Below, in pieces: positions 7,151-42,099 of a DNA stretch of 64,000 nucleotides; within the stretch, counting starts at the first letter, position 1; the number at the start of each line of letters is the position of its first letter. The DNA is taken from positions 39,122,001-39,186,000 of the forward strand of contig NC_043004.1 in the NCBI RefSeq assembly GCF_006345805.1, given 5' to 3'. The stretch comes from Octopus sinensis. Taxonomy: Eukaryota. The translations under genes were made by a program, and so were the position numbers. The notes under the pieces are model-generated. The model was not told the origin of the DNA. It ran no database searches and worked only from the letters and a program-made list of their open reading frames with translations.

Positions 7151-8209
7151 AATGTATATATATTCGTATGCACACATATATATGTATACATATGAATTAT
7201 CAGCTACCAGTGGTGGTGTATCTGAATTATCAGCTGCCAGTGACTGATACTCCACTTTATGTTGGAGAAGTCCTTATGATGGCCACGGAATGTTCCGACG
7301 AAACGAGACAACGAGTTGGTGTTTTTCTTAGCCATGCTCTTGATGGGTTGCACGTGGAGTATATACCTTCTTCACCCATATTTTAAATTAGTGGCTATCA
7401 CGCTTGTGCAGTGTTTGTAATGCAGTCGAATGGTTTGAGTGGGTCTATAGATTACAGCATTTCAGATGAAGGATTCTTCAAGTAGGCAGTTATTAAAATC
7501 TAAGCTGTTACGCCATAGTATTGACTGGAGACTATGTCGGCATGTGTCAGCATCTATAAGGCGCAATACTTGGAAGTGATGTAGTCTAACAGGTTTCAGT
7601 AACGTTAATGTTGTGGAAATTGAAGAGTTTATAATATCGATGGGTTCTGAGGAAATGTTTAATTCGCACAGAAATATATATACACGGCTGTCTTCTTCAA
7701 TTTGACTAAGCGTCAAATCAAGTGTTTACGAAGCAAGCTCCTTACTTCGCAGCCTTGAGTGTGTGCGTGTGTGTGTTCATAGACGAAAAATACTTGATAC
7801 ACTCACAATATTGAAAGAAAGCTATTTTAATGTTATTTACTGTTACAAAATAGCATTTCAAAAACCTGACAGACTATCACAAACCTATGGACAAGAATTA
7901 TTCTTATGAGTATTTCGCGAATAAGTCCTTTCGTTGTTCAACTTTTCAAACACGTGTATTTCTCGGCAGCATTTACTAAACTATATATTACATAGCCTCA
8001 GAAACAGGATAGAATATGCAAGATTATATAGTTATATACACATGTAAAAATTATATGGGTGCGTATAAATATATCGCACTATGAACTATATGTAAATATA
8101 TATACTGCACATAAATATCTCAATATAAACACAGGTATATATTTGTATTTCTGTTCGTATGCATAACTACAAAGTAAATAGATTAACAAAAATATAACAA
8201 TGTAACACT

Positions 8210-15830: not shown

Positions 15831-18024
15831 ACAAATTTTTTCGGCTTTTCCTTCCTTTTTTTTTTTGTTTTTTTACTTGATCTAATATTTATCTTAGAAT
15901 AATATAAGTTCTTTTGTTCCTCCTTTTTTATATTTCGGAATAAGTTACTTTCAACTTTTCCACCGTTATTCTAAAGCATCTCTGGGCAGAATCGGTAAAT
16001 TACAGGCTGTACTCTTCACTTACATATCCCTGTTTTCTCAGTCCAAATCTCATCAGGTTTGTTTGTCTTTTTATCTCACCCACGCGAAACCGATAGAATA
16101 AGGTGGAACAAGTACTTAGGCTAATATAATCACCAAAATATAAGTCATCTTGTATCTCAGTTGACAATCAGTATTTGATTTGATCAAAAATAATGATTTG
16201 TTTATATAAAGATCTTTGAAATATTGTAAATGCTTCAATAATTTTTTTGATCTTTTAACTGTTTTTGCTTCATCTTCTGCTATTGTTACTATTCTTGCTT
16301 TTGTTTCTGTTGATCTTCTTGTTGCTGCCATTTCAAAATATTTTCGTAACTATTAGTAGGATTTTAATGAAAACGTAAAAGCAAAATAAATAAAACGTTA
16401 AGAACAACAAAACAGAAACACAGACATTTAGAGACAAAGATGTCAGAAAATTTTCTTTCAAAATGTTGAAAAGTCAATAAATTGATTTCTCTCATAGATA
16501 AAAACAAAATTTCAAAATGGAGAGAAAAAGAAACAAGATGGAAGATATAACAGTTATTGCGGTATATATTAAAGTGTTAATAAGATCACTTCAGTTATGA
16601 GAGAGTGACGTAAATAGGCAAAAAGTAATATTCATGATATTTTGATGAGACCTTTCTGGTGTGAAGATATTGTAAATAGAAATCAAGAAAGAATGAATGA
16701 ACGAAAGATCCGCAGAAAGATAAACAGATAGACAGACAGATAATCATTATTTGCTTAAGAACTTTAAGACGTAAATTAAAATGTTTCTGATACTGACATT
16801 TAGTGTACTCTTCATTGCGCTAAGTGATTACGGGGTGGTGAAGGTTGTAATTGAAGCGGTAGTGGTAGTAGTGTTGATAGTATTATCAGTACTGAGGAGA
16901 AGTGATTGTTGAGGTGATGGCAATGGTGAGAAATTTGAAGGCCAGATTTTGTGTTTGTCTATTGGCCGCAGGACTGAGTTTAACGTTTTCCGAGTCCATA
17001 TTTATGATTACAATTCTTGTGAACACCGTAGCGTAACAAAACAACAATTATACGCTGGCTAAAGCCTTGCGTTTTGCCCAATCTATTTCCTTCTATATAA
17101 ACTATTTCCTTCTAAGAGACCAAACGAGAATACACAATTTTGGACGACCATACTGTTAAAAATGAACACCAATCCTTCCTTATATAAGCAGATATGGGTT
17201 TCTAATTTAAAGGCTTGCTTTGACATCTCTTGGTTTCGGGTTCAGCTGTACTGCCTGATACCTTGAACGAGTGTCTACTACTATATCTTCGGGCTTAACA
17301 ATGCCTTTTGAGAGAATTTGTTTGACTGTGTGGAAACCTGTCTTATATATATGTGTGCGTGTGTCTTGCGTCTGTGTTTATCCCATAACGTCGTTTAACA
17401 ACGTGTGTCAGTATGTTTACGTCCCCGTGACGTCGCGGATCAGCGATGATGGCTCAGCATGGCTGCAGTCCAATAACGCAAAAGACAATAGATAATAACA
17501 CCCAAATGAAGCTCAACATACACCAAAACCGACGGCTGGTCACAGCTGGATTAACTTGATGCTAGATCCCATCGATCTGAGCTGACCTAGAACAAAGGAG
17601 TAGTAGTTATTTACTTCTATATGGAATAAGCTCATGACATGATGATTACATAGGAATATGAAGAGTTGAGTATTCAGTAGTAAACCAAAGGTGACAGCGA
17701 ACTCCATCCAAATCGGGAGATTTTTCCGAACTAATAGATCATATTAGTCATTCGTTAATTGAAATATTTCATCCGCGCACGCCACGACTACAGGTTCATA
17801 TGCTGAATTGGTAAATCCTGGCTGTGGACAATTTGCTGTCTGCTTCTGTTTGTTAGTTTGTTGAGCGAATCGGTCTTCGTCTCAGAGTGGGAGAAGTCTG
17901 AAACGTGGTTCTTTGCTATTCGTAATAGCCGCAGAAGAGAAAGCAGGTCAACCCCCGACACCGAGAACATTGACGGATGGATGAATGTGCATCGAGTCTG
18001 GGCGGTTGCGTAGGAAGTCGGGAA

Positions 18025-26157: not shown

Positions 26158-26569
26158 CTTTACTCTTTTACTTGTTTCTGTCATTTGACTGTGGCCATGC
26201 TGGAGCACCACCTTTTTAGTCGAGCGAATCGACCCCAGGACTTATTCTTTGTAAGCCCAGTACTTATTCAATCGGTCTCTTTTGCCGAACCGCTAAGTTA
26301 CGGGAACGTAAACACACCAGCATCGGTTGTCAAGCGATGTTGGGGGGACAAACACAGACACACGAACACACACATATACATATATATATATACATATACA
26401 TATACACGACGGGCTTCTTTCAGTTTCCGTCTGCCAAATCCACTCACAAGTCTTTGGTCGGCCTGAGGCTATAGTATACGACATTTTCCCAAGGTGCCAC
26501 GCAGTGGGACTGAACCCGGAACCATGTGGTTCGTAAGCAAGCTACTTACCACACAGCCACTCCTACGCC
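26158..26569 (-). mobile_element. Family-A SINE, full length
   Basis: Ends ...agctacttaccacacagccactcctacgcc. Confidence 0.93.
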
Positions 26570-27480
26570 TAGAGTATCTTGGGTTACGTTTACGTATTCT
26601 TTCTTATGTTACAATACATACTGGAATTTGATGACATTTGGCAGCTCCGAAAAATTTTCAATTCAGGTCTTTTTGGTTCTATATATTCCACATGGAAACT
26701 GATCCTAGCCTATAAGACTTTTCATTTGACTTTTCGTTGAGGTCGATAATCAAAGAATAAAATTAAATGAAATAAGAGAAAAATGTCTTTTGTTCATTAA
26801 ATGCCATTTAGTTGATTGGTTCTTAACCCTTTAGTGTTTAAACCGGCCATATCTGGCCCAGATATTCTACAAGTTTTATATTGAAACTGGCGATATCTAG
26901 CCTATTGCACCTAACCTACATTGACATTCTAAAAATAAACAATCACATCATTGAAACCTCAAAAGCTATGAGATAATGCAGGATTAATTCAAAACAATTT
27001 GAGTGGAAAAGTATTACAGTTAACAGAGTTATCTGAACATTAAAGTGTTAAAGACGCCGTTGGATAAACAGAAAATTCTTTACGACCTCTAATGAGACTT
27101 CATTACAATTAGTGCTCGTGCTCTTTGCTCTATGTGCCGTAGGGTACCCAACGGTACCCAGCATCACATTTTTAAGTGAGAATTCATGTGCAGATGTAAA
27201 TTAAGTGTGGAGTACATATACACTACACTCTTAGAAACTAAGACACTCTGCCAGAAAGTTTAAAGATCAACATGGTCTCTTTTGCCTTGACATGAGTTAC
27301 ATCGACGCTGTCCAACACGAGACTGTAAGCCTTTCATCAAATTGTTACGTCAGCCGAATCTGTCTGAAATCACACCAAACACTCTATTAAACATTAACCT
27401 ATTGGAGGTTGTAATCTCTCACTATATGTATATATGTATGTGCATCACATACATATATACCTTCTATTTGTAGCGGTCGT

Positions 27481-29364: not shown

Positions 29365-29711
29365 ATTTACATGTTTCAGTCATTTGACTGCGGCCATGCT
29401 GGAGCACCGCCTTTAGTTATTCTTTGTAAGCCTAGTACTTATTCTATCAGTCTCTTTTGCCGAACCGCTAAGTTACGGGGACGTAAACAAACCAGCATCA
29501 GTTGTCGAGCGATGTTGGGGGAGGGGGACAAACACAACACACAAACATACATATATATATATACATATATACGACGGGCTTCTTTCAGTTTCCGTCTACC
29601 AAATCCGCTCACAAGGCTTTGACGGCCCGAGGCTATAGTAGAAGACACTTGCCCAAGGTGCCACGCAGTGGGACTGAATCCGGAACCATGTGGTTGGTAA
29701 GAAAGCTACTT
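29365..29711 (-). mobile_element. Family-A SINE, 3' portion (split by the 2-kb insertion)
   Basis: Runs to ...ggaaccatgtggttggtAAGAAAGCTACTT; the missing head resumes at 31716. Confidence 0.92.
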
Positions 29712-30076
29712 TATTTCATAACATTTGCCATAAAGGCAGTACATAGAGTAAGTTAGCTTTGCGGGCTGGACGAGGACATTAATGAAGTGAATGATAATGA
29801 AAGAAAGATGATGGGAATGGGAGAAGACAAAAAGCGCCCGCCGACTTCTGCTTCTCTAAAACATTGTTCTTTTAAAAACAAACACAAAACGAGGTATTAA
29901 ACATCTTACAATTTTTTCAATTTTTGGACTTAACGGTCCATTACTAACAACAACATAGTTCAATAATTACATAAGATATAAATACATATCACAAAGCCCC
30001 TCCTCCCAGACCTGGCTTACACTTCCATTAGGAATGCGCCAGCTCTAGGTCGGGGCCCCTCAAGTCGTATCACAAT

Positions 30077-30535
30077 TTATGACTCGTCCTCAAAATAACT
30101 TGTGCCCGCGCCCTCCAACATCCACCACGCCTCCCTCAGAATGTAATCGAGTTCCGTGTTAGCGTCGCCCGGGACCAAGCTATAATCCTCATTGAGCTCC
30201 TTCAGCCCAAGCGTCACGTCGAACGCCACGGCCTCCACAGCTACCTGCGGAGGCCATTCGGGGTCCTGTGTGAAGGCTAAAGGTGCTCCCTTGTGATGCT
30301 TTTCCATCACCTTTTCAATCTCTCCGCCTCTATGGAAGTGGATCAATACCTCGTTTTTCCTCGGGTGCGGGATATTCAATTCTTTCGTTGGCGGCAGAGT
30401 TCCCGCCAACGGTGTTTATTCTCCTGTCGGTGGCACAACCCCAACCGACGTAGTTCCGGGACATTCCGGTGCTATGTCACCGACAGTCAGTAATGTCCCG
30501 TTTCTCTTCCTCTTTTTCTTTTTTTTCTTTTCAAC
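30077..30535 (-). pseudogene. Probable frameshifted C-terminal continuation of ORF1 (one in-frame TAA at 30416-30418)
   Basis: ORF-track entries 30416..30616 and 30077..30409 share one frame: VEKKKKKKRKRNG...GE*TPLAGTLPP...EDES*; same GC-rich composition as ORF1. Confidence 0.6.
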
Positions 30536-31340
30536 TGAGGGATGGTGCGTCTCCTCTGTGGCCGGAAGATTCGCCTTTTTTCTCCTCATCCCTAGTATCC
30601 TTTGGTGAGCACCCATTGTTGCCTACCTTCCTCTTTCGGCCTCTGTTTGAGGAATCCTCTGCTTCCTCGGCCGTTATCATTCCCTCTTCTACAGGGTTTT
30701 CACTTAACTGTTCCGGGATCCTATTTTGTTCCCGGGGACAGTTCTTCTTTATATGGCCGGACACCAAGCACCGATGACACTTAGGGGGGCGACCCTCAAG
30801 TATCACCGGGTACCTGCACCCGGCCATTTTAAAAAAATCTGGAAGAACCAGATTGGCTGATTGGGTCCAAAGGGTCAAAATTGCTTTTGACCCAACCCAA
30901 GCAGCCGAAGGAAGAACTTTTACATTAAGGAGCTTAGTTTCGCTGCTACCCAGACCCCGGCGGATAGTCTCCTCTATCCACTCGGGTTTTATCCCGGGTG
31001 GCAGCCCGCTAATCCAAGCTTTCGTCAGTCTCTTTTTTTGGTACGTGGGCAGGAATAAAATTTCCTTACCCTCCAGGAGTTTGCTAGCAAATTTGCAAGC
31101 CTCTTCAGGGGTGTCAAATAGCAACCACACCGTTGCATATTTGACACCCCTGGAAATGAATTTAATTGTTGGCAAATACTCTGCCAACTCCTTTTCAATT
31201 GCCGTCTTTTCGAATAGGGCGATGGTGTCGAGTGCCTTGGAGTAGGTTCTCAACACCACCGTCCTATCTTCACGGTCTTTTAACCACTTTTTAGGCGGTA
31301 TGATCTCCCATTCCAAAATTCTGTCATTTTTCATTGCCAT
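30531..31340 (-). CDS. ORF1p-like nucleic-acid-binding protein, N-terminal ~270 aa (ATG at 31340); RRM-like segments plus a CCHC zinc knuckle
   Basis: VWLLFDTPEEACKF and TKAWISGLPPGIKPEWI (RRM-like); YPVILEGRPPKCHRCLVSGHIKKNCP = C-x2-C-x4-H-x4-C, as in Tx1/L1-type ORF1. Confidence 0.85.
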   Translation of the reverse strand: MAMKNDRILEWEIIPPKKWLKDREDRTVVLRTYSKALDTIALFEKTAIEKELAEYLPTIKFISRGVKYATVWLLFDTPEEACKFASKLLEGKEILFLPTYQKKRLTKAWISGLPPGIKPEWIEETIRRGLGSSETKLLNVKVLPSAAWVGSKAILTLWTQSANLVLPDFFKMAGCRYPVILEGRPPKCHRCLVSGHIKKNCPREQNRIPEQLSENPVEEGMITAEEAEDSSNRGRKRKVGNNGCSPKDTRDEEKKGESSGHRGDAPSLS

Positions 31341-31715
31341 GTTTTTTTTTGTTTTTTTTTTTAATATATTCAAATTAAACTTAAAAAGCGAGAAGAAAAA
31401 AGTTCAAAAGTCCAAATGAAATTCGATAGATTTTTGAAAAAACAAAAAGGAGAAAGCACAACAGAAGGGAAGATATCAATGGAAAGTCGCAATAAACAAA
31501 AAAAAAACAAAAGGGGGAGTTAAATGAAGTTCAAAAGAAAGTTAATAAACAGCAAAACACAGCAAAAATCTTCTGGCATTACGGTACTCCCGGCCTGAGT
31601 TGAACCTGGAACGCCGCAACTATAACACAACTTCCACAAAAATTGGTCCAAAAGGTAATCCAAGTGGCTTATTCTTAAAGTTTTCTTGCGAGATACGCCC
31701 ACAAGAAAAATTCTC

Positions 31716-31750
31716 AAGAAAGCTACTTACCAGACAGCCACTCCTACGCC
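31716..31750 (-). mobile_element. Head of the split family-A SINE
   Basis: aagaaagctacttaccagacagccactcctacgcc. Confidence 0.9.
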
Positions 31751-32021
31751 TATGGTCACTTATTGTGTGAATGTCATTGGGAAATGTATGAACATCAAAA
31801 TATCTCATATCATTATGCCATGATATCAAAATGGATTATCATACGTTTATCGGTGATACACCCGAGTACACATGTACCTAGATAAAATAGCTACTTCATC
31901 CGTTCTTTCAAACATATTCACGCAGCCCTTAGCTCTTCTTACTCGAGGATTTACTTTCTCGACAACAAACGCACATTCTTACAATTTATACCAAAAACAG
32001 GCGCACACATACGCACACAAG

Positions 32022-35960: not shown

Positions 35961-35985
35961 TTATATATTTATATAGATATATATA

Positions 35986-36058
<73 letters not shown>

Positions 36059-36106
36059 GAAAAAACAAGTCAAAAATAGAAAACGCTAAAATAATTTTAT
36101 AGTGAA

Positions 36107-36154
36107 CATTTCAGTACCGGTTTCGGTCATTTTGAGACCTTTTCAACTGTAACG
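36107..36154 (-). ncRNA. Minimal type I hammerhead-like motif, U3-A8 core variant
   Basis: Reverse complement of 36677-36724. Confidence 0.65.
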
Positions 36155-36676
36155 ATTAAATAATTAAATTTAGAAAAATTAGAAGAAAAGTTTTTTTAAA
36201 AGAATATTTCTATAGTAGTGTTCAGATTTAAGTGGCATTCTGCCTTTCTCTGACTCCCTTGTTTGCACTTGTGTGTCGGAGGTCGTTGTGAGTTCTTGGA
36301 AGGGTAGTAGAGGAAGAAGGCTGGTGGGGAAAGGGGGATGGGAGAATCTGGGAGTGCCCTGATGGTCGTATTTTGAATCGTCAGTGGCGGCTGGCAGTCT
36401 CAGTTCAAAATATTCTCCTGAATTGAACTGAGACTGCCAGCCGCCACTGACCATTCAAAATACGACCATAAGGGCACTCCCAGATTCTCCCATCCCCCTT
36501 TCCCCACCAGCCTTCTTCCTCTACTACCCTTCCAAGAACTCACAACGACCTCCGACACACAAGTGCAAACAAGGGAGTCAGAGAAAGGCAGAATGCCACT
36601 TAAATCTGAACACTACTATAGAAATATTCTTTTAAAAAAACTTTTCTTCTAATTTTTCTAAATTTAATTATTTAAT

Positions 36677-39473: not shown

Positions 39474-41316
39474 TAGTCAGGAGATAGGACAGTAAATTTG
39501 ACGTGTTATGTTGCTTTTGATATTGTTGGGAAGGAGGGAGGAAGGAAAAGTGGTACCATCTATCGAGAATCCTAATCTTAATGTTTACAAAAGTGTGAAC
39601 CCTAGTAACTGCACCCGAGATGTCTAGAAGAGGTTGTTTAACCACGAAATGGGTTACGCTTACCTCTCAAACAGATCAAAGCGGGATTTAAACTCAGAAC
39701 ACCAGCAACGAGAACAAATTCTGCATGGCATCTGGACCCCGCATTCTTAGAGTTCCAGCAATCATCCACAAGGATGTAAGGTAAACTTCACCCTCAGGAG
39801 GATTTGAACTCAGATCGCAGACAGTATTAAAAACAATATGTGAAACACTGTCCGATGCAAATTTGCCGACTGTAAATCAGTTCGCCCCCTGTTTCATTCG
39901 GTCATTTTGTCGTCTCCTACTCCTCCGCTTATTCTTCAATATTATTCTTATTTTTCTTATTCAATTTATGCATTACGTTTTCTACTCATCCTTTTCCCCT
40001 GCTTCCTTTTCTCCTCCACCTTTTCTCCTTTTTCTCTTCCTATTTTTATTTCCTCCCCTTTTCTCCTCTTTTTTCGCCTTCTACTTCTCCACTTTCGTCT
40101 TCCCCAGCCTCCTCCATTTATCTTTACTTTTCATCTCCACCCTCATTTACGTAGTTTCTTTTATATCGTTTTCTTTTCCTTCTTGACATCTCAATTTTAG
40201 ATGAGAAAAATATGTACTTTCTTCCTCAATGAGCTTCTTTTTTTTTTTTTTTTTCATTTTCTTAATTTCTTTCTATAGCTTCTGCTAAAATCTCAACTCA
40301 CTCGAAGAAAAAAGAAGCGCAAACGAAATCTTAAAAAGAAAACTAATTGACTCTTCGTAAAAGTACGTTTTCTGTCGGATTGTATGAGTTATCAATTGCC
40401 TTCATATTATATACATCAACATATGTTACAAGTTGATGCCGTCACTCTTTTATGGCATCAATGAATATGATCAAATATGTACATAAGCAGCATATATGTG
40501 TGTCCTTGTGTCTATATTTACTGTCTAAATGTGTGTGTGTTTCTAGGCTGTTAGCAAATATTTCTCATAACATTTGCAAATACTGACTAAATTTGAGTTG
40601 GAATAAAGAGCTGTATTATGAACGGAATTTATAATTTTCTAGGAGTTATTGGGGGCGTACAGGAAAATCAAATATGACACGTCTTAAACTCGTCTTATTA
40701 GCTATCAGTAACGTAACTGTAGTCAACGTCGCACTGGTTTTTGAAATTAGTAAAAGGATGTTTATTTCAATAGATCCTATAGTTGACAGAACCGTTCTGA
40801 ATGTTCCGACATGTATTTATTTTGTTCACCACCAAATGTTTAAAAACATATATGGAAATAATATAGGAGAGTCGGTTTGAGGGTTGAAAATGCATCTCAG
40901 TCTTAAAACGAAATGTAGTTTTGATTTTCATTGACATGTTCATTAAAAAGCATACCGGTTTCCTCAATTTTTGCTTTCCATTGATAAATAAAGAAGTGAA
41001 AGAGCACCATTCGCTACAACATGATTCATATATCAAATGGTCAAACAAATTATTTATATTCAGTTAATTTCATGGTAATAGAAAATAAAAGTTCACCTGT
41101 TCGATGAATTTCATAAAACTTATACATACACAGTTGAGGTTCGGTTGCTCTCAAGTAATAAGTTATATAAACAATTAGATACGATGAAGGTTTAAAAGAG
41201 ACTGAAAAATATTATTTTTTAATTTCTGTCGTAGTGCATTAAGGAGAATTATTCATCATTGAGTTTGCTGTTTGATAACTGTTTAAAGCTGAAATTGCTT
41301 TATATATATATATATA

Positions 41317-41348
<32 letters not shown>

Positions 41349-41576
41349 ATAGAAATATTAAAATTACTAAGTCTCTCTAAAAGAGAACAACGGCAGCGTT
41401 CCCGGAAAATATTAGTTATCGCCATACTAATATGGCATTCTTATAAAAATAAGAAAAAGCTGACCGCTTATTAGCTCCATGAGGCCATCGCCTTAAGTTA
41501 GCTATTTGATACACAAACTGTATCCATATAACCTTTGAACAAGGGAGGTCAGTCGCTCCACACTACTTGGCCGGCA

Positions 41577-41618
41577 GCTACAGACGCGTTTCGGGGTATT
41601 GCCCCTTTTCAATGCAGC
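41577..41618 (-). ncRNA. Minimal type I hammerhead-like motif, U3-A8 core variant
   Basis: Minus strand gctgca TTGAAAA GGGG caata CCCC GAAACGCGTC tgtagc. Confidence 0.7.
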
Positions 41619-41938
41619 GTAGCCAAACCAGTAGGTGTCGCTTCCGACAATCTCTGTTCAAAGGTTTTATTTACCTAGCTTCGGTGGAATACATCCACTT
41701 GTTTTCAATAATAGAAATATTAAAATTACTAAGTCTCTCTAAAAGAGAACAACGGCAGCGTTCCCGGAAAATATTAGTTATCGCCATACTAATATGGCAT
41801 TCTTATAAAAATAAGAAAAAGCTGACCGCTTATTAGCTCCATGAGGCCATCGCCTTAAGTTAGCTATTTGATACACAAACTGTATCCATATAACCTTTGA
41901 ACAAGGGAGGTCAGTCGCTCCACACTACTTGGCTGGCA

Positions 41939-41980
41939 GCTACAGACGCGTTTCGGGGTATTGCCCCTTTTCAATGCAGC
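41939..41980 (-). ncRNA. Second copy of the U3-A8 hammerhead-like motif
   Basis: Identical motif 362 bp downstream. Confidence 0.7.
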
Positions 41981-42099
41981 GTAGCCAAACCAGTAGGTGT
42001 CGCTTCCGACAATCTCTGTTCAAAGGTTTTTTTACCTAGCTTCGGTGGAATACATCCACTTGTTTTCAATAATAGAAATATTAAAATTACTAAGTCGTT

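What the first reader, a model, noticed from the sequence alone, without database searches (positions are those of the whole stretch)
29699..31728. ORF1-only (half-LINE, HAL1-like) retroelement with a Tx1-type ORF1 and a clean 13-bp TSD
Seen: a 2004-bp insert on the minus strand bounded by AAGAAAGCTACTT twice. Both copies carry a private A where other family-A SINE copies read aagCaagctactt, so this is a true TSD. Inside are a ~375-bp 5' UTR, a gag-like ORF1 (RRM-like segments plus one CCHC knuckle; ~430 aa if one frameshift and one TAA are repaired), a ~365-bp non-coding 3' UTR and an AATAAA-like end overlapping the TSD. No endonuclease or RT trace. Known: ORF1-only HAL1 elements derived from L1/Tx1 are described mainly in vertebrates. 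Inference: this is a non-autonomous half-LINE family retrotransposed in trans, possibly undescribed in cephalopods.
Basis: partly seen in the sequence, partly recalled or inferred. Interest (0 to 1): 0.8.

Follow-up and report, generated by a model that had tools for sequence, protein, structure and literature searches.

The report
ORF1-only retroelement inserted in a SINE
A decayed 2-kb octopus jumping gene that carries only the RNA-binding "ORF1" half of a LINE, sits in a short repeat between perfect 13-bp duplications, and has two relatives joined to the same nucleotide of that repeat; it is a modestly interesting new variant of a known kind, not a new class.

Summary
Window 29712-31715 (minus strand) is a 2004-bp insertion flanked by an exact 13-bp duplication. 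Removing it restores a gap-free SINE. It has a 375-nt 5' UTR and an ORF1 with two RRM-like domains and one CCHC knuckle. An orphan C-terminal extension follows, then a 365-nt 3' UTR. There is no endonuclease or reverse transcriptase.

The ORF1 is a remote but significant relative of ORF1s that lie directly upstream of APE-RT-zf-RVT ORF2s in four cephalopod LINE loci. The "L1/Tx1-type ORF1" reading therefore holds.

The element is not single-copy. Two Octopus sinensis relatives (L001, L002) also lack ORF2, and ORF1 diverged under purifying selection (dN/dS about 0.2). A second, unrelated ORF1-only family (L004/L006) exists in O. vulgaris.

The half-LINE family is still not proven. L002 diverges from the window copy just after the stop codon. 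The 3' UTR matches nothing, no partner LINE was found, and only three copies are known.

One new point: all three copies join the first ~40 bp of the same SINE at the same nucleotide. This suggests Tx1-like target preference or a captured head.

Verdict: new variant of a known kind, with moderate interest.

The parts
31716..31728 (-). 5' copy of the target-site duplication (AAGTAGCTTTCTT on the element strand)
   Evidence: Exact 13/13 repeat. It lies in the SINE head.
29699..29711 (-). 3' copy of the target-site duplication
   Evidence: Exact 13/13 repeat. The SINE continues ACCAACCACATGG directly after it.
29712..31715 (-). Whole inserted element (2004 bp)
   Evidence: Removing it restores a collinear SINE. 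Related copies are L002 15940-17680 (about 78-84% identity) and L001 9997-10975.
31341..31715 (-). 5' UTR (375 nt). It starts GAGAATTTTTC, at the start of a unit that is a tandem ~78-bp monomer in L002.
   Evidence: Alignments A1 and A2. TRF finds period 78 x 1.9 at L002 15942-16094. Divergence from L002 is 29%, against 16% in ORF1.
30531..31340 (-). ORF1, 269 aa plus TGA. RRM-like domain 1 is about 31047-31292, RRM-like domain 2 about 30798-31031, and the CCHC knuckle 30738-30779.
   Evidence: ORF list. AlphaFold model and Foldseek. Remote homologues at E 2e-20 to 1e-10. tblastn with the L003 LINE ORF1 gives E 1.6e-18. dN/dS against L001 is 0.20-0.24.
31106..31152 (-). Conserved 20-bp-stem RNA hairpin inside the ORF1 coding sequence
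   Evidence: dG -34.7 kcal/mol, z -6.3. It is also present in L001 (z -6.5) and L002 (z -3.8, with one G-C to A-U double change).
30495..30540 (-). A-rich run where the reading frame shifts between ORF1 and the C-terminal region
   Evidence: The frame relation differs in the three copies: +1 in the window, 0 in L002, +2 in L001.
30077..30535 (-). C-terminal extension of the ancestral ORF (about 150 codons, +1 frame). It has an in-frame TAA at 30416-30418 and a terminal TAA at 30077-30079.
   Evidence: Conserved in L002 (82% nt) and, at protein level, in L001 (DDLVIFFHKGGAV against NEVLIHFHRGGEI). No homologue among 1.84 billion representatives. No similarity to the C-terminal domain of other ORF1s.
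29712..30076 (-). Non-coding 3' UTR (365 nt) ending ...ATGAAATA, with no poly(A)
   Evidence: Stop codons in all frames. No match in L001-L008 or elsewhere in the window. No similarity to the 5' regions.
29400..29698 (-). 3' part of the target SINE
   Evidence: Collinear with the intact copy at 26216-26590.
31729..31752 (-). 5' head of the target SINE upstream of the TSD

Best explanation
The insert is a decayed copy of a non-LTR retroelement of the L1/Tx1 type that carries only its ORF1 gene. Shown: it entered a SINE by a mechanism that leaves a 13-bp target duplication. It encodes a tandem-RRM plus CCHC protein with a family-specific C-terminal extension. It has no endonuclease or reverse transcriptase. 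At least two relatives in Octopus sinensis are likewise ORF2-less. ORF1 was under purifying selection while the subfamilies diverged. Inferred: a polymerase II transcript starts in the monomer-bearing 5' region and is translated into ORF1p, which coats its own RNA. An endonuclease and reverse transcriptase supplied in trans by an autonomous L1/Tx1-type LINE nicks the SINE antisense strand at ...CTACTT/ACC and primes reverse transcription on the RNA 3' end. The second nick, 13 bp away, gives the duplication. All three copies join the SINE at the same nucleotide, so the borrowed endonuclease probably prefers that site, as many Tx1-clade elements prefer one spot in another repeat. Alternatively, the family has captured the SINE head as its own 5' end. 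The window copy is now dead: it has a frameshift in an A-run and one in-frame TAA.
For: Exact TSD and gap-free empty site. ORF1 fold and homology: AlphaFold pLDDT 80.5 with two RRM-like domains, Foldseek tandem-RRM hits, and CCHC hits in PDB. Fifty remote relatives were found, and the named ones are all cephalopod. Relatives P0005, P0021, P0010 and P0006 sit directly upstream of ORF2s; Exo_endo_phos and zf-RVT were confirmed by Pfam in L003, and the others match the L003 ORF2 by tblastn. The L003 LINE is flanked by (ATT)n on both sides. No EN or RT follows the ORF in the window, L001 or L002. dN/dS between window and L001 ORF1 is 0.20-0.24. All three copies are damaged, as expected of transposon relics: L002 has several stops, and P0001 has lost the first Cys of the knuckle. 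An independent ORF1-only family (L004/L006) shares ORF1 and a 3' tail, and the L004 tail matches the tails of autonomous LINEs. SINE junction: L001 and L002 carry SINE positions 1 to about 40 and break after GCTTGCTT, exactly where the window TSD ends. The sequence after the break is unrelated to the SINE. Chance of such a coincidence per copy is roughly 0.116 x 0.5 x 5/330, about 1e-3, using the SINE genome fraction from PMC13282606. Tx1-clade target preference for other transposons and captured snRNA heads are documented (PMC4494074).
Against: Only three copies are known, and only the window copy has both ends. L002 loses homology 6 nt after the stop codon, so a shared ORF1-3'UTR architecture is not shown. 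L001 and L002 lack the downstream half of the SINE, which a simple site-specific insertion would leave. There is no poly(A) tail and no significant 3'-tail similarity to any LINE in hand. No other predicted protein of the family exists among 5.8 billion, so copy number is probably low. The ORF1 is the most divergent branch among the cephalopod ORF1s examined (22-31% identity), so no close autonomous relative is identified.
Confidence: 0.58

Rival explanations
1. One-off deletion derivative. The window copy, and separately L001 and L002, are dead-on-arrival or later-deleted copies of an autonomous Tx1-like LINE whose full-length version is not in the data. There is no self-propagating ORF1-only family.
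For: Window and L002 do not share sequence after the stop codon. The 3' UTR is unique. Few copies are known. Autonomous LINEs of the same ORF1 superfamily are common in octopus.
Against: Window and L002 lose homology at the same nucleotide, just after the ORF stop, which independent deletions would not produce. No ORF2 trace follows the ORF in any of three copies. No ORF1 closer than about 30% identity is linked to an ORF2. ORF1-only architecture recurs in a second octopus family.
Confidence: 0.2
2. Composite transcript. The family unit ends at ...TAAATTGTG, and the window's 365-nt tail is foreign. It would be a 3' transduction from the source locus or a template switch during reverse transcription.
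For: There is a sharp homology break right after TAAATTGTG in the only other copy reaching that point. The tail matches nothing else. The element ends at an AATAAA-like sequence.
Against: The flank after the L002 break shows no target or TSD signature, so L002 could equally be rearranged. L1-type lineages are known to swap UTRs between subfamilies (PMC5753468), and window and L002 are about 16% diverged.
Confidence: 0.15
3. Retrocopy of a host gene. An ORF1-derived domesticated gene, such as LOC115225585 (P0001), was retro-copied into the SINE by a LINE.
For: P0001 is annotated as a single-exon gene with an open 281-aa frame. dN/dS is 0.2. The layout is mRNA-like: 5' UTR, ORF, 3' UTR.
Against: There is no poly(A) tail. 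P0001 itself has lost the first Cys of the CCHC knuckle and its C-terminal region is frameshifted and truncated. L002 is riddled with stops. Tandem 5' monomers and the shared SINE junction in all copies are transposon features.
Confidence: 0.07

Closest known systems
HAL1 (half-L1) elements of mammals
   Same: Non-autonomous LINE derivative that keeps 5' UTR, ORF1 and 3' UTR and lacks ORF2. ORF1 is kept under selection. Such derivatives arise more than once; HAL1 arose several times (PMC5753468, citing Bao & Jurka 2010), and here there are two unrelated octopus ORF1-only families.
   Different: HAL1 comes from mammalian L1, whose ORF1p is generally described as a coiled-coil/RRM/CTD type (my own knowledge, not tested here), and is assumed here to end in poly(A) like other L1 derivatives (also my own knowledge). 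This ORF1 has tandem RRMs plus a CCHC knuckle, the element has no poly(A), the host is a cephalopod, and insertion appears targeted. Propagation as a family is not yet shown.
Tx1-clade LINEs (Tx1L, Keno, Kibi, Koshi, Tx1-Mar)
   Same: The element's ORF1 has RRM-like domains plus a CCHC knuckle; I take this as the L1/Tx1 ORF1 type from my own knowledge, and no curated Tx1 ORF1 was compared here. Autonomous cephalopod relatives of this ORF1 have APE, RT and zf-RVT. Insertion at one spot in another repeat or microsatellite, and families that carry a captured head of a small-RNA gene at their 5' end, are documented for the clade (PMC4494074).
   Different: This element has no ORF2, so clade assignment by RT cannot be made. 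The target here would be a SINE, which the papers I read do not list as a target.
Octopus ORF1-only family L004/L006 (P0007, P0009), found here
   Same: About 2-kb units with 5' UTR, ORF1 and 3' UTR and no ORF2 within 8 kb. They lie next to (TA)n: L004 on both sides, L006 upstream only. ORF1 is of the same superfamily.
   Different: ORF1 identity is only about 28%. The L004 3' tail clearly matches the conserved tail of autonomous LINEs (L003, L005, L007, L008), which the window element's tail does not.

Membership tests
Half-LINE (HAL1-like, ORF1-only non-autonomous LINE derivative) | Encodes a protein homologous to a LINE ORF1 | tested here: met
   phmmer E 1e-13 to P0005 and 3e-6 to P0021, both upstream of ORF2. 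tblastn E 1.6e-18.
Half-LINE (HAL1-like, ORF1-only non-autonomous LINE derivative) | Complete, TSD-bounded copy lacks ORF2 (EN/RT) | tested here: met
   The 2004-bp insert lies between exact TSDs. There is no EN or RT hit, and the 3' UTR has stops in all frames.
Half-LINE (HAL1-like, ORF1-only non-autonomous LINE derivative) | Several copies share the same ORF2-less architecture (same ORF1-3'UTR junction, different TSDs) | tested here: inconclusive
   Three copies lack ORF2, but L002 diverges right after the stop codon and L001 is truncated. No genome-wide search was possible.
Half-LINE (HAL1-like, ORF1-only non-autonomous LINE derivative) | 3' end shared with, or recognisable by, a partner LINE (poly(A) for L1-type, shared tail for stringent types) | tested here: not met
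   No poly(A). Tail similarity to the cephalopod LINE tails is at background level (28% of random 60-mers score as well).
Half-LINE (HAL1-like, ORF1-only non-autonomous LINE derivative) | ORF1 evolves under purifying selection within the lineage | tested here: met
   dN/dS 0.20 (residues 1-215) and 0.24 overall, window against L001.
L1/Tx1-group non-LTR retrotransposon | ORF1 with RRM domain(s) and a CCHC knuckle | tested here: met
   AlphaFold and Foldseek. CCHC hits.
L1/Tx1-group non-LTR retrotransposon | ORF2 with APE endonuclease, RT and C-terminal zinc-binding domain | tested here: not met
   Absent from this element. Present next to remote ORF1 relatives: Pfam confirmed Exo_endo_phos and zf-RVT in L003, and L005, L007 and L008 match the L003 ORF2 by tblastn.
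L1/Tx1-group non-LTR retrotransposon | Placement in the Tx1 clade by RT phylogeny | not testable with these tools
   The element has no RT, and no RTclass1 or Repbase reference set is available.
L1/Tx1-group non-LTR retrotransposon | Target-site preference (typical of the Tx1 clade) | tested here: inconclusive
   3 of 3 copies join the SINE after ...GCTT(G/T)CTT. However, L001 and L002 lack the downstream SINE half, and n = 3.
Processed pseudogene / retrogene | Poly(A) tail and origin from a spliced host mRNA | tested here: not met
   No poly(A). The relatives are themselves decayed repeats with tandem 5' monomers. The parent-gene question was not tested.
tRNA-derived SINE (the target) | tRNA-like head recognisable by tRNA models | tested here: not met
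   ARAGORN finds no tRNA in the window and Rfam finds no tRNA match at the head. The A-box and B-box likeness is by eye only. Repeat status itself is clear: 16 heads in 290 kb.

The most novel reading that the evidence does not exclude
A long-lived, SINE-targeting half-LINE lineage. An ORF1-only Tx1-like element has its own monomeric promoter, a conserved coding-region RNA hairpin and an orphan C-terminal domain. It has persisted under selection without any ORF2 of its own by borrowing a site-specific endonuclease and RT, and it inserts at one nucleotide of an abundant octopus SINE.
Probability: 0.25. Interest if true: 0.6.

Novelty: new variant of a known kind. Interest (0 to 1): 0.45.

Why it matters
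In the papers I could read, ORF1-only half-LINEs are described only for mammalian L1. Finding them, apparently twice independently, in the L1/Tx1-type LINEs of octopus would show that keeping ORF1 and stealing ORF2 is a recurrent parasitic strategy among non-LTR elements. It would also give a natural test of how much ORF1p contributes in cis. The shared SINE junction, if confirmed genome-wide, would add a SINE to the list of Tx1-type targets. It would also offer a route by which SINE heads and LINE bodies become fused. Practically, such elements are annotated as "uncharacterized protein" genes in octopus genomes or spliced into chimeric gene models (P0001, P0002, P0007, P0009), so recognising them improves annotation.

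Tried and rejected
1. Other copies in the window: none.
2. Pfam on the ORFs: only a sub-threshold zf-CCHC.
3. Homology of the C-terminal ~150 aa: nothing among 1.84 billion representatives, and hhalign against the conserved C-terminal domain of other ORF1s (Y..LK..FP.DVG) gave probability below 1%. It remains an orphan.
4. Decayed ORF2 downstream of L001 and L002: none by tblastn or six-frame reading. The L002 flank holds what looks by eye like a reversed mariner-type transposase remnant (not checked by search).
5. Downstream SINE half or a second TSD copy in L001 and L002: not found.
6. Idea that the L001/L002 5' region is a whole diverged SINE: rejected, because similarity after the head is at shuffle level.
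7. Idea that the window 3' UTR is a diverged 5' monomer or UTR of a tandem neighbour, prompted by AATTGTG at both the ORF end and monomer starts: rejected, with scores at shuffle level.
8. Apparent match of the window 3' end to the conserved LINE tail box: looked convincing by eye but failed the background test.
9. Rfam scan for ribozymes or tRNA at the junctions: nothing.
10. Exact-protein look-ups of the window ORFs to find the source contig: not on record.
11. Second protein search with a family profile and no low-complexity tail: still only P0001 and P0002.
12. The HAL1 primary paper (PMC2923044) is not held.
Full report
**Observation.** The 13-mer AAGAAAGCTACTT occurs exactly twice in the window, at 29699-29711 and 31716-31728. 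Four further one-mismatch matches lie in other copies of the same SINE; chance expectation is 0.15 matches. I deleted the 2004 bp between the repeats and kept one repeat copy. The result aligns without a gap at the junction to an intact SINE copy at 26216-26590. This is a clean insertion with a 13-bp target-site duplication. The 'private A' is shared by both TSD copies. Three other copies read C at that position, although the copy at 7815 also has A.

**Anatomy on the minus strand.**
- 5' UTR: 31341-31715, 375 nt.
- ORF1: 31340-30531, 269 aa ending in TGA.
- A-rich run at about 30495-30540.
- Continuation in the +1 frame: 30535-30080, interrupted by one TAA (30416-30418) and ending at TAA 30077-30079.
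- 3' UTR: 29712-30076, 365 nt, with stops in every frame.

The element ends ...ATGAAATA directly against the TSD (AAGTAGC...). The AATAAA therefore spans the junction and there is no poly(A) tail. There is no second copy in the window.

**What the protein is.** Pfam sees only a sub-threshold zinc knuckle. An exhaustive HMMER search of 1.84 billion representatives found 50 relatives. All of them match residues ~11-280 only, and the named ones are all cephalopod: Octopus sinensis, O. vulgaris, O. bimaculoides and Argonauta hians. An AlphaFold model built on their alignment (pLDDT 80.5) shows two beta-alpha-beta-beta-alpha-beta domains followed by the knuckle. Foldseek returns tandem-RRM proteins: NONO/SFPQ, hnRNP A1 UP1 and IMP3 RRM12. 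The family profile hits CCHC knuckles in the PDB.

I fetched the loci of six of these relatives, with the following results.
- P0005 (L003) is followed by an Exo_endo_phos endonuclease, RT remnants and a zf-RVT domain.
- P0021 (L005, Argonauta) is followed by a nearly intact ORF2 read as two adjoining frames of 827 and 342 aa.
- P0010 (L007) and P0006 (L008) lie in tandem arrays of complete ORF1-ORF2 units about 5.3 kb apart.
- The L003 LINE is flanked on both sides by (ATT)n.

The window's ORF1 therefore belongs to the ORF1 superfamily of cephalopod L1/Tx1-type LINEs, at least one of which sits in a microsatellite. L1-Tx1 is an annotated superfamily in octopus genomes (PMC8967140, PMC13282606). 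Clade placement by RT cannot be done because the element has no RT.

**The C-terminal region.** In L002 the A-run is one base shorter, so ORF1 reads in frame into this region. In L001 the region lies in the +2 frame but is conserved at protein level. The region has no homologue anywhere and is unrelated to the C-terminal domain shared by several other ORF1s of the superfamily.

**Is it a family, and is it ORF1-only?** Two protein searches of 5.8 billion sequences, the second with a family profile and no candidate cap, found only two close relatives. Both are O. sinensis gene models.
- P0001 (L001) has an open 281-aa frame at 66% identity over the aligned part of the full query (72-74% over the core). 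It has lost the first Cys of the knuckle, and its C-terminal region is frameshifted and truncated by another repeat.
- P0002 (L002) is a chimeric gene model. It splices the start of a stop-ridden copy onto an integrase about 20 kb away.

Neither locus, nor the window, has any EN or RT similarity after the ORF. ORF1 of the window and of L001 differ with dN/dS of 0.20-0.24, so the protein was functional while the subfamilies diverged. In an NJ tree the window/P0001 pair is the longest, most isolated branch, at 22-31% identity to all others.

Independently, P0007 (L004) and P0009 (L006) of O. vulgaris are ORF1-only units of about 2 kb with no ORF2 within 8 kb. Both lie next to (TA)n: L004 on both sides, L006 upstream only. 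They share ORF1 and about 100 nt near the 3' end. Separately, the L004 3' tail carries the conserved tail box of the autonomous LINEs. ORF1-only architecture is therefore recurrent in octopus.

**What is not shown.** L002 aligns with the window copy from the 5' UTR to the stop codon, then loses all similarity 6 nt later, after TAAATTGTG. The 365-nt 3' UTR matches nothing in about 290 kb of related loci, elsewhere in the window, or in its own 5' regions. A resemblance between the window's last 45 nt and the LINE tail box looked persuasive in an alignment. It failed a background test: 28% of random 60-mers from the window score as well. The defining property of a half-LINE family is many copies with the same ORF1-3'UTR junction and a tail shared with a partner. 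That property remains unproven. The tail could be subfamily-specific, transduced, or acquired by template switching.

**New finding: the SINE junction.** In L001 (9448-9487) and L002 (15698-15738) the family sequence is preceded by the first ~40 bp of the same SINE, in the same orientation. The SINE sequence ends after ...GGTAAGTAGCTTGCTT, the very nucleotide where the window's 5' TSD copy ends. After that point L001 and L002 share about 330 bp of family-specific sequence, 69% identical to each other and unrelated to the rest of the SINE. Tandem ~78-bp monomers follow. The window copy begins at the start of the last monomer (GAGAAT...).

Of 16 SINE heads in the sequences in hand, all but one of the other 13 continue with recognisable SINE sequence (the exception, window 7731, is too diverged to tell). 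The three joined to this family all break at the same nucleotide. SINEs make up 11.6% of the O. vulgaris genome (PMC13282606). A chance coincidence of repeat, orientation and position within a few bases is therefore of the order of 1e-3 per copy.

Two readings fit, and both have precedent in the Tx1 clade (PMC4494074).
- The first is target-specific insertion into another transposon. L001 and L002 would be full-length at the 5' end, and the window copy would be 5'-truncated or started from an internal monomer.
- The second is a target-derived head captured as the family's own 5' end, as with the U1/U2 heads of Tx1-Mar families.

Both are, however, incomplete at the 3' side.

**Mechanism.**
- Shown: target-site duplication, ORF1-only content, relatedness to LINE ORF1s, past selection on ORF1, and present decay.
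- Inferred: transcription from the monomer region; ORF1p binding its own RNA; nicking of the SINE antisense strand at CTACTT/ACC; and target-primed reverse transcription by an EN-RT supplied in trans by an autonomous L1/Tx1-type LINE, which was not identified.

**Rivals.**
- One-off deletion derivatives of an unseen autonomous LINE (0.20). This is weakened by the identical homology break point in the window and L002 and by the absence of any ORF2 trace in three copies.
- A composite transcript whose tail is foreign (0.15).
- A retrocopy of a domesticated host gene (0.07). This is weakened by the missing poly(A), the decay of every copy including the annotated 'gene', and the transposon-like 5' monomers and SINE junction.

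**Novelty and score.** Half-LINEs are known (HAL1; PMC5753468), and L1-Tx1 elements are annotated in octopus. What would be new is ORF1-only derivatives of Tx1-type LINEs in a cephalopod, arising at least twice, one of them tied to a fixed position in a SINE. I rate it a new variant of a known kind, interest 0.45. The main limit is that no cephalopod genome could be searched at the DNA level here.

Noticed in passing
window 31106-31152 (minus strand); L001 10189-10235; L002 about 16626-16672: A 20-bp-stem RNA hairpin lies inside the ORF1 coding sequence (codons for RGVKYATVWLLFDTP). In the window dG is -34.7 kcal/mol with z -6.3. It is conserved in all three copies, with one G-C to A-U double change in L002 and a G-U wobble in L001. 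It may be a cis-acting signal.
   Followed up: partly
window 41290-42096: Directly after a (TA)n microsatellite, a 362-bp unit is repeated 2.1 times at 99% identity. Its first ~180 bp are 78% identical to the 5' terminus of the O. vulgaris ORF1-only element in L004 (7570-7749), which also abuts (TA)n. It may be a (TA)n-targeting non-autonomous relative.
   Followed up: partly
L007 2935-17026 and L008 795-16850: Complete ORF1-ORF2 LINE units are arranged head-to-tail about every 5.3 kb, with three or more units per locus, in O. vulgaris and O. sinensis. This is a tandem array of an L1/Tx1-type LINE.
   Followed up: no
L003 9720-9775 and 15345-15375; L004 7575-7630 and 9720-9750: The L003 LINE is flanked on both sides by (ATT)n, and the L004 ORF1-only element by (TA)n. 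This suggests microsatellite-specific insertion, as in Tx1-clade Kibi and Koshi.
   Followed up: partly
L003 15322-15345; L005 13220-13245; L007 7680-7712 and 12958-12990; L008 7303-7335 and 12604-12640; L004 9615-9655: A conserved 3'-terminal box (..TGTATTGTCCCCTCTTTGTTGGCCCCTTGTGGGTAATAAA) is shared by autonomous cephalopod LINEs from Octopus and Argonauta and by the ORF1-only L004 element. It is a candidate RT-recognition tail.
   Followed up: partly
L002 10001-36638 (P0002, 'K02A2.6-like' of O. sinensis): The annotated gene model is a chimera. Its residues 83-129 come from the start of the decayed ORF1 copy at 16438, and its C-terminus is an rve integrase ORF at 35970-36638.
   Followed up: partly
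L001 10001-10846 (P0001, LOC115225585): The only open-frame relative has Phe in place of the first Cys of the CCHC knuckle (PPKFHLCLEPGHIKKNCP). It is probably a relic rather than a working gene.
   Followed up: no
L006 7330-7790 and 9715-9780: The L006 ORF1-only element is preceded by a long near-perfect inverted repeat (foldback). About 65 bp of that repeat recur as a direct repeat after the element's 3' end.
   Followed up: no
window 30071-30079 and L002 17671-17679, compared with monomer starts at L002 15952, 16041 and 16113: The sequence at the ORF stop (TCATAAATTGTGA) resembles the start of the 5' monomers (TCACTTAATTGTGAGAAT). No wider similarity between the 3' and 5' regions was found, so this may be chance.
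   Followed up: yes
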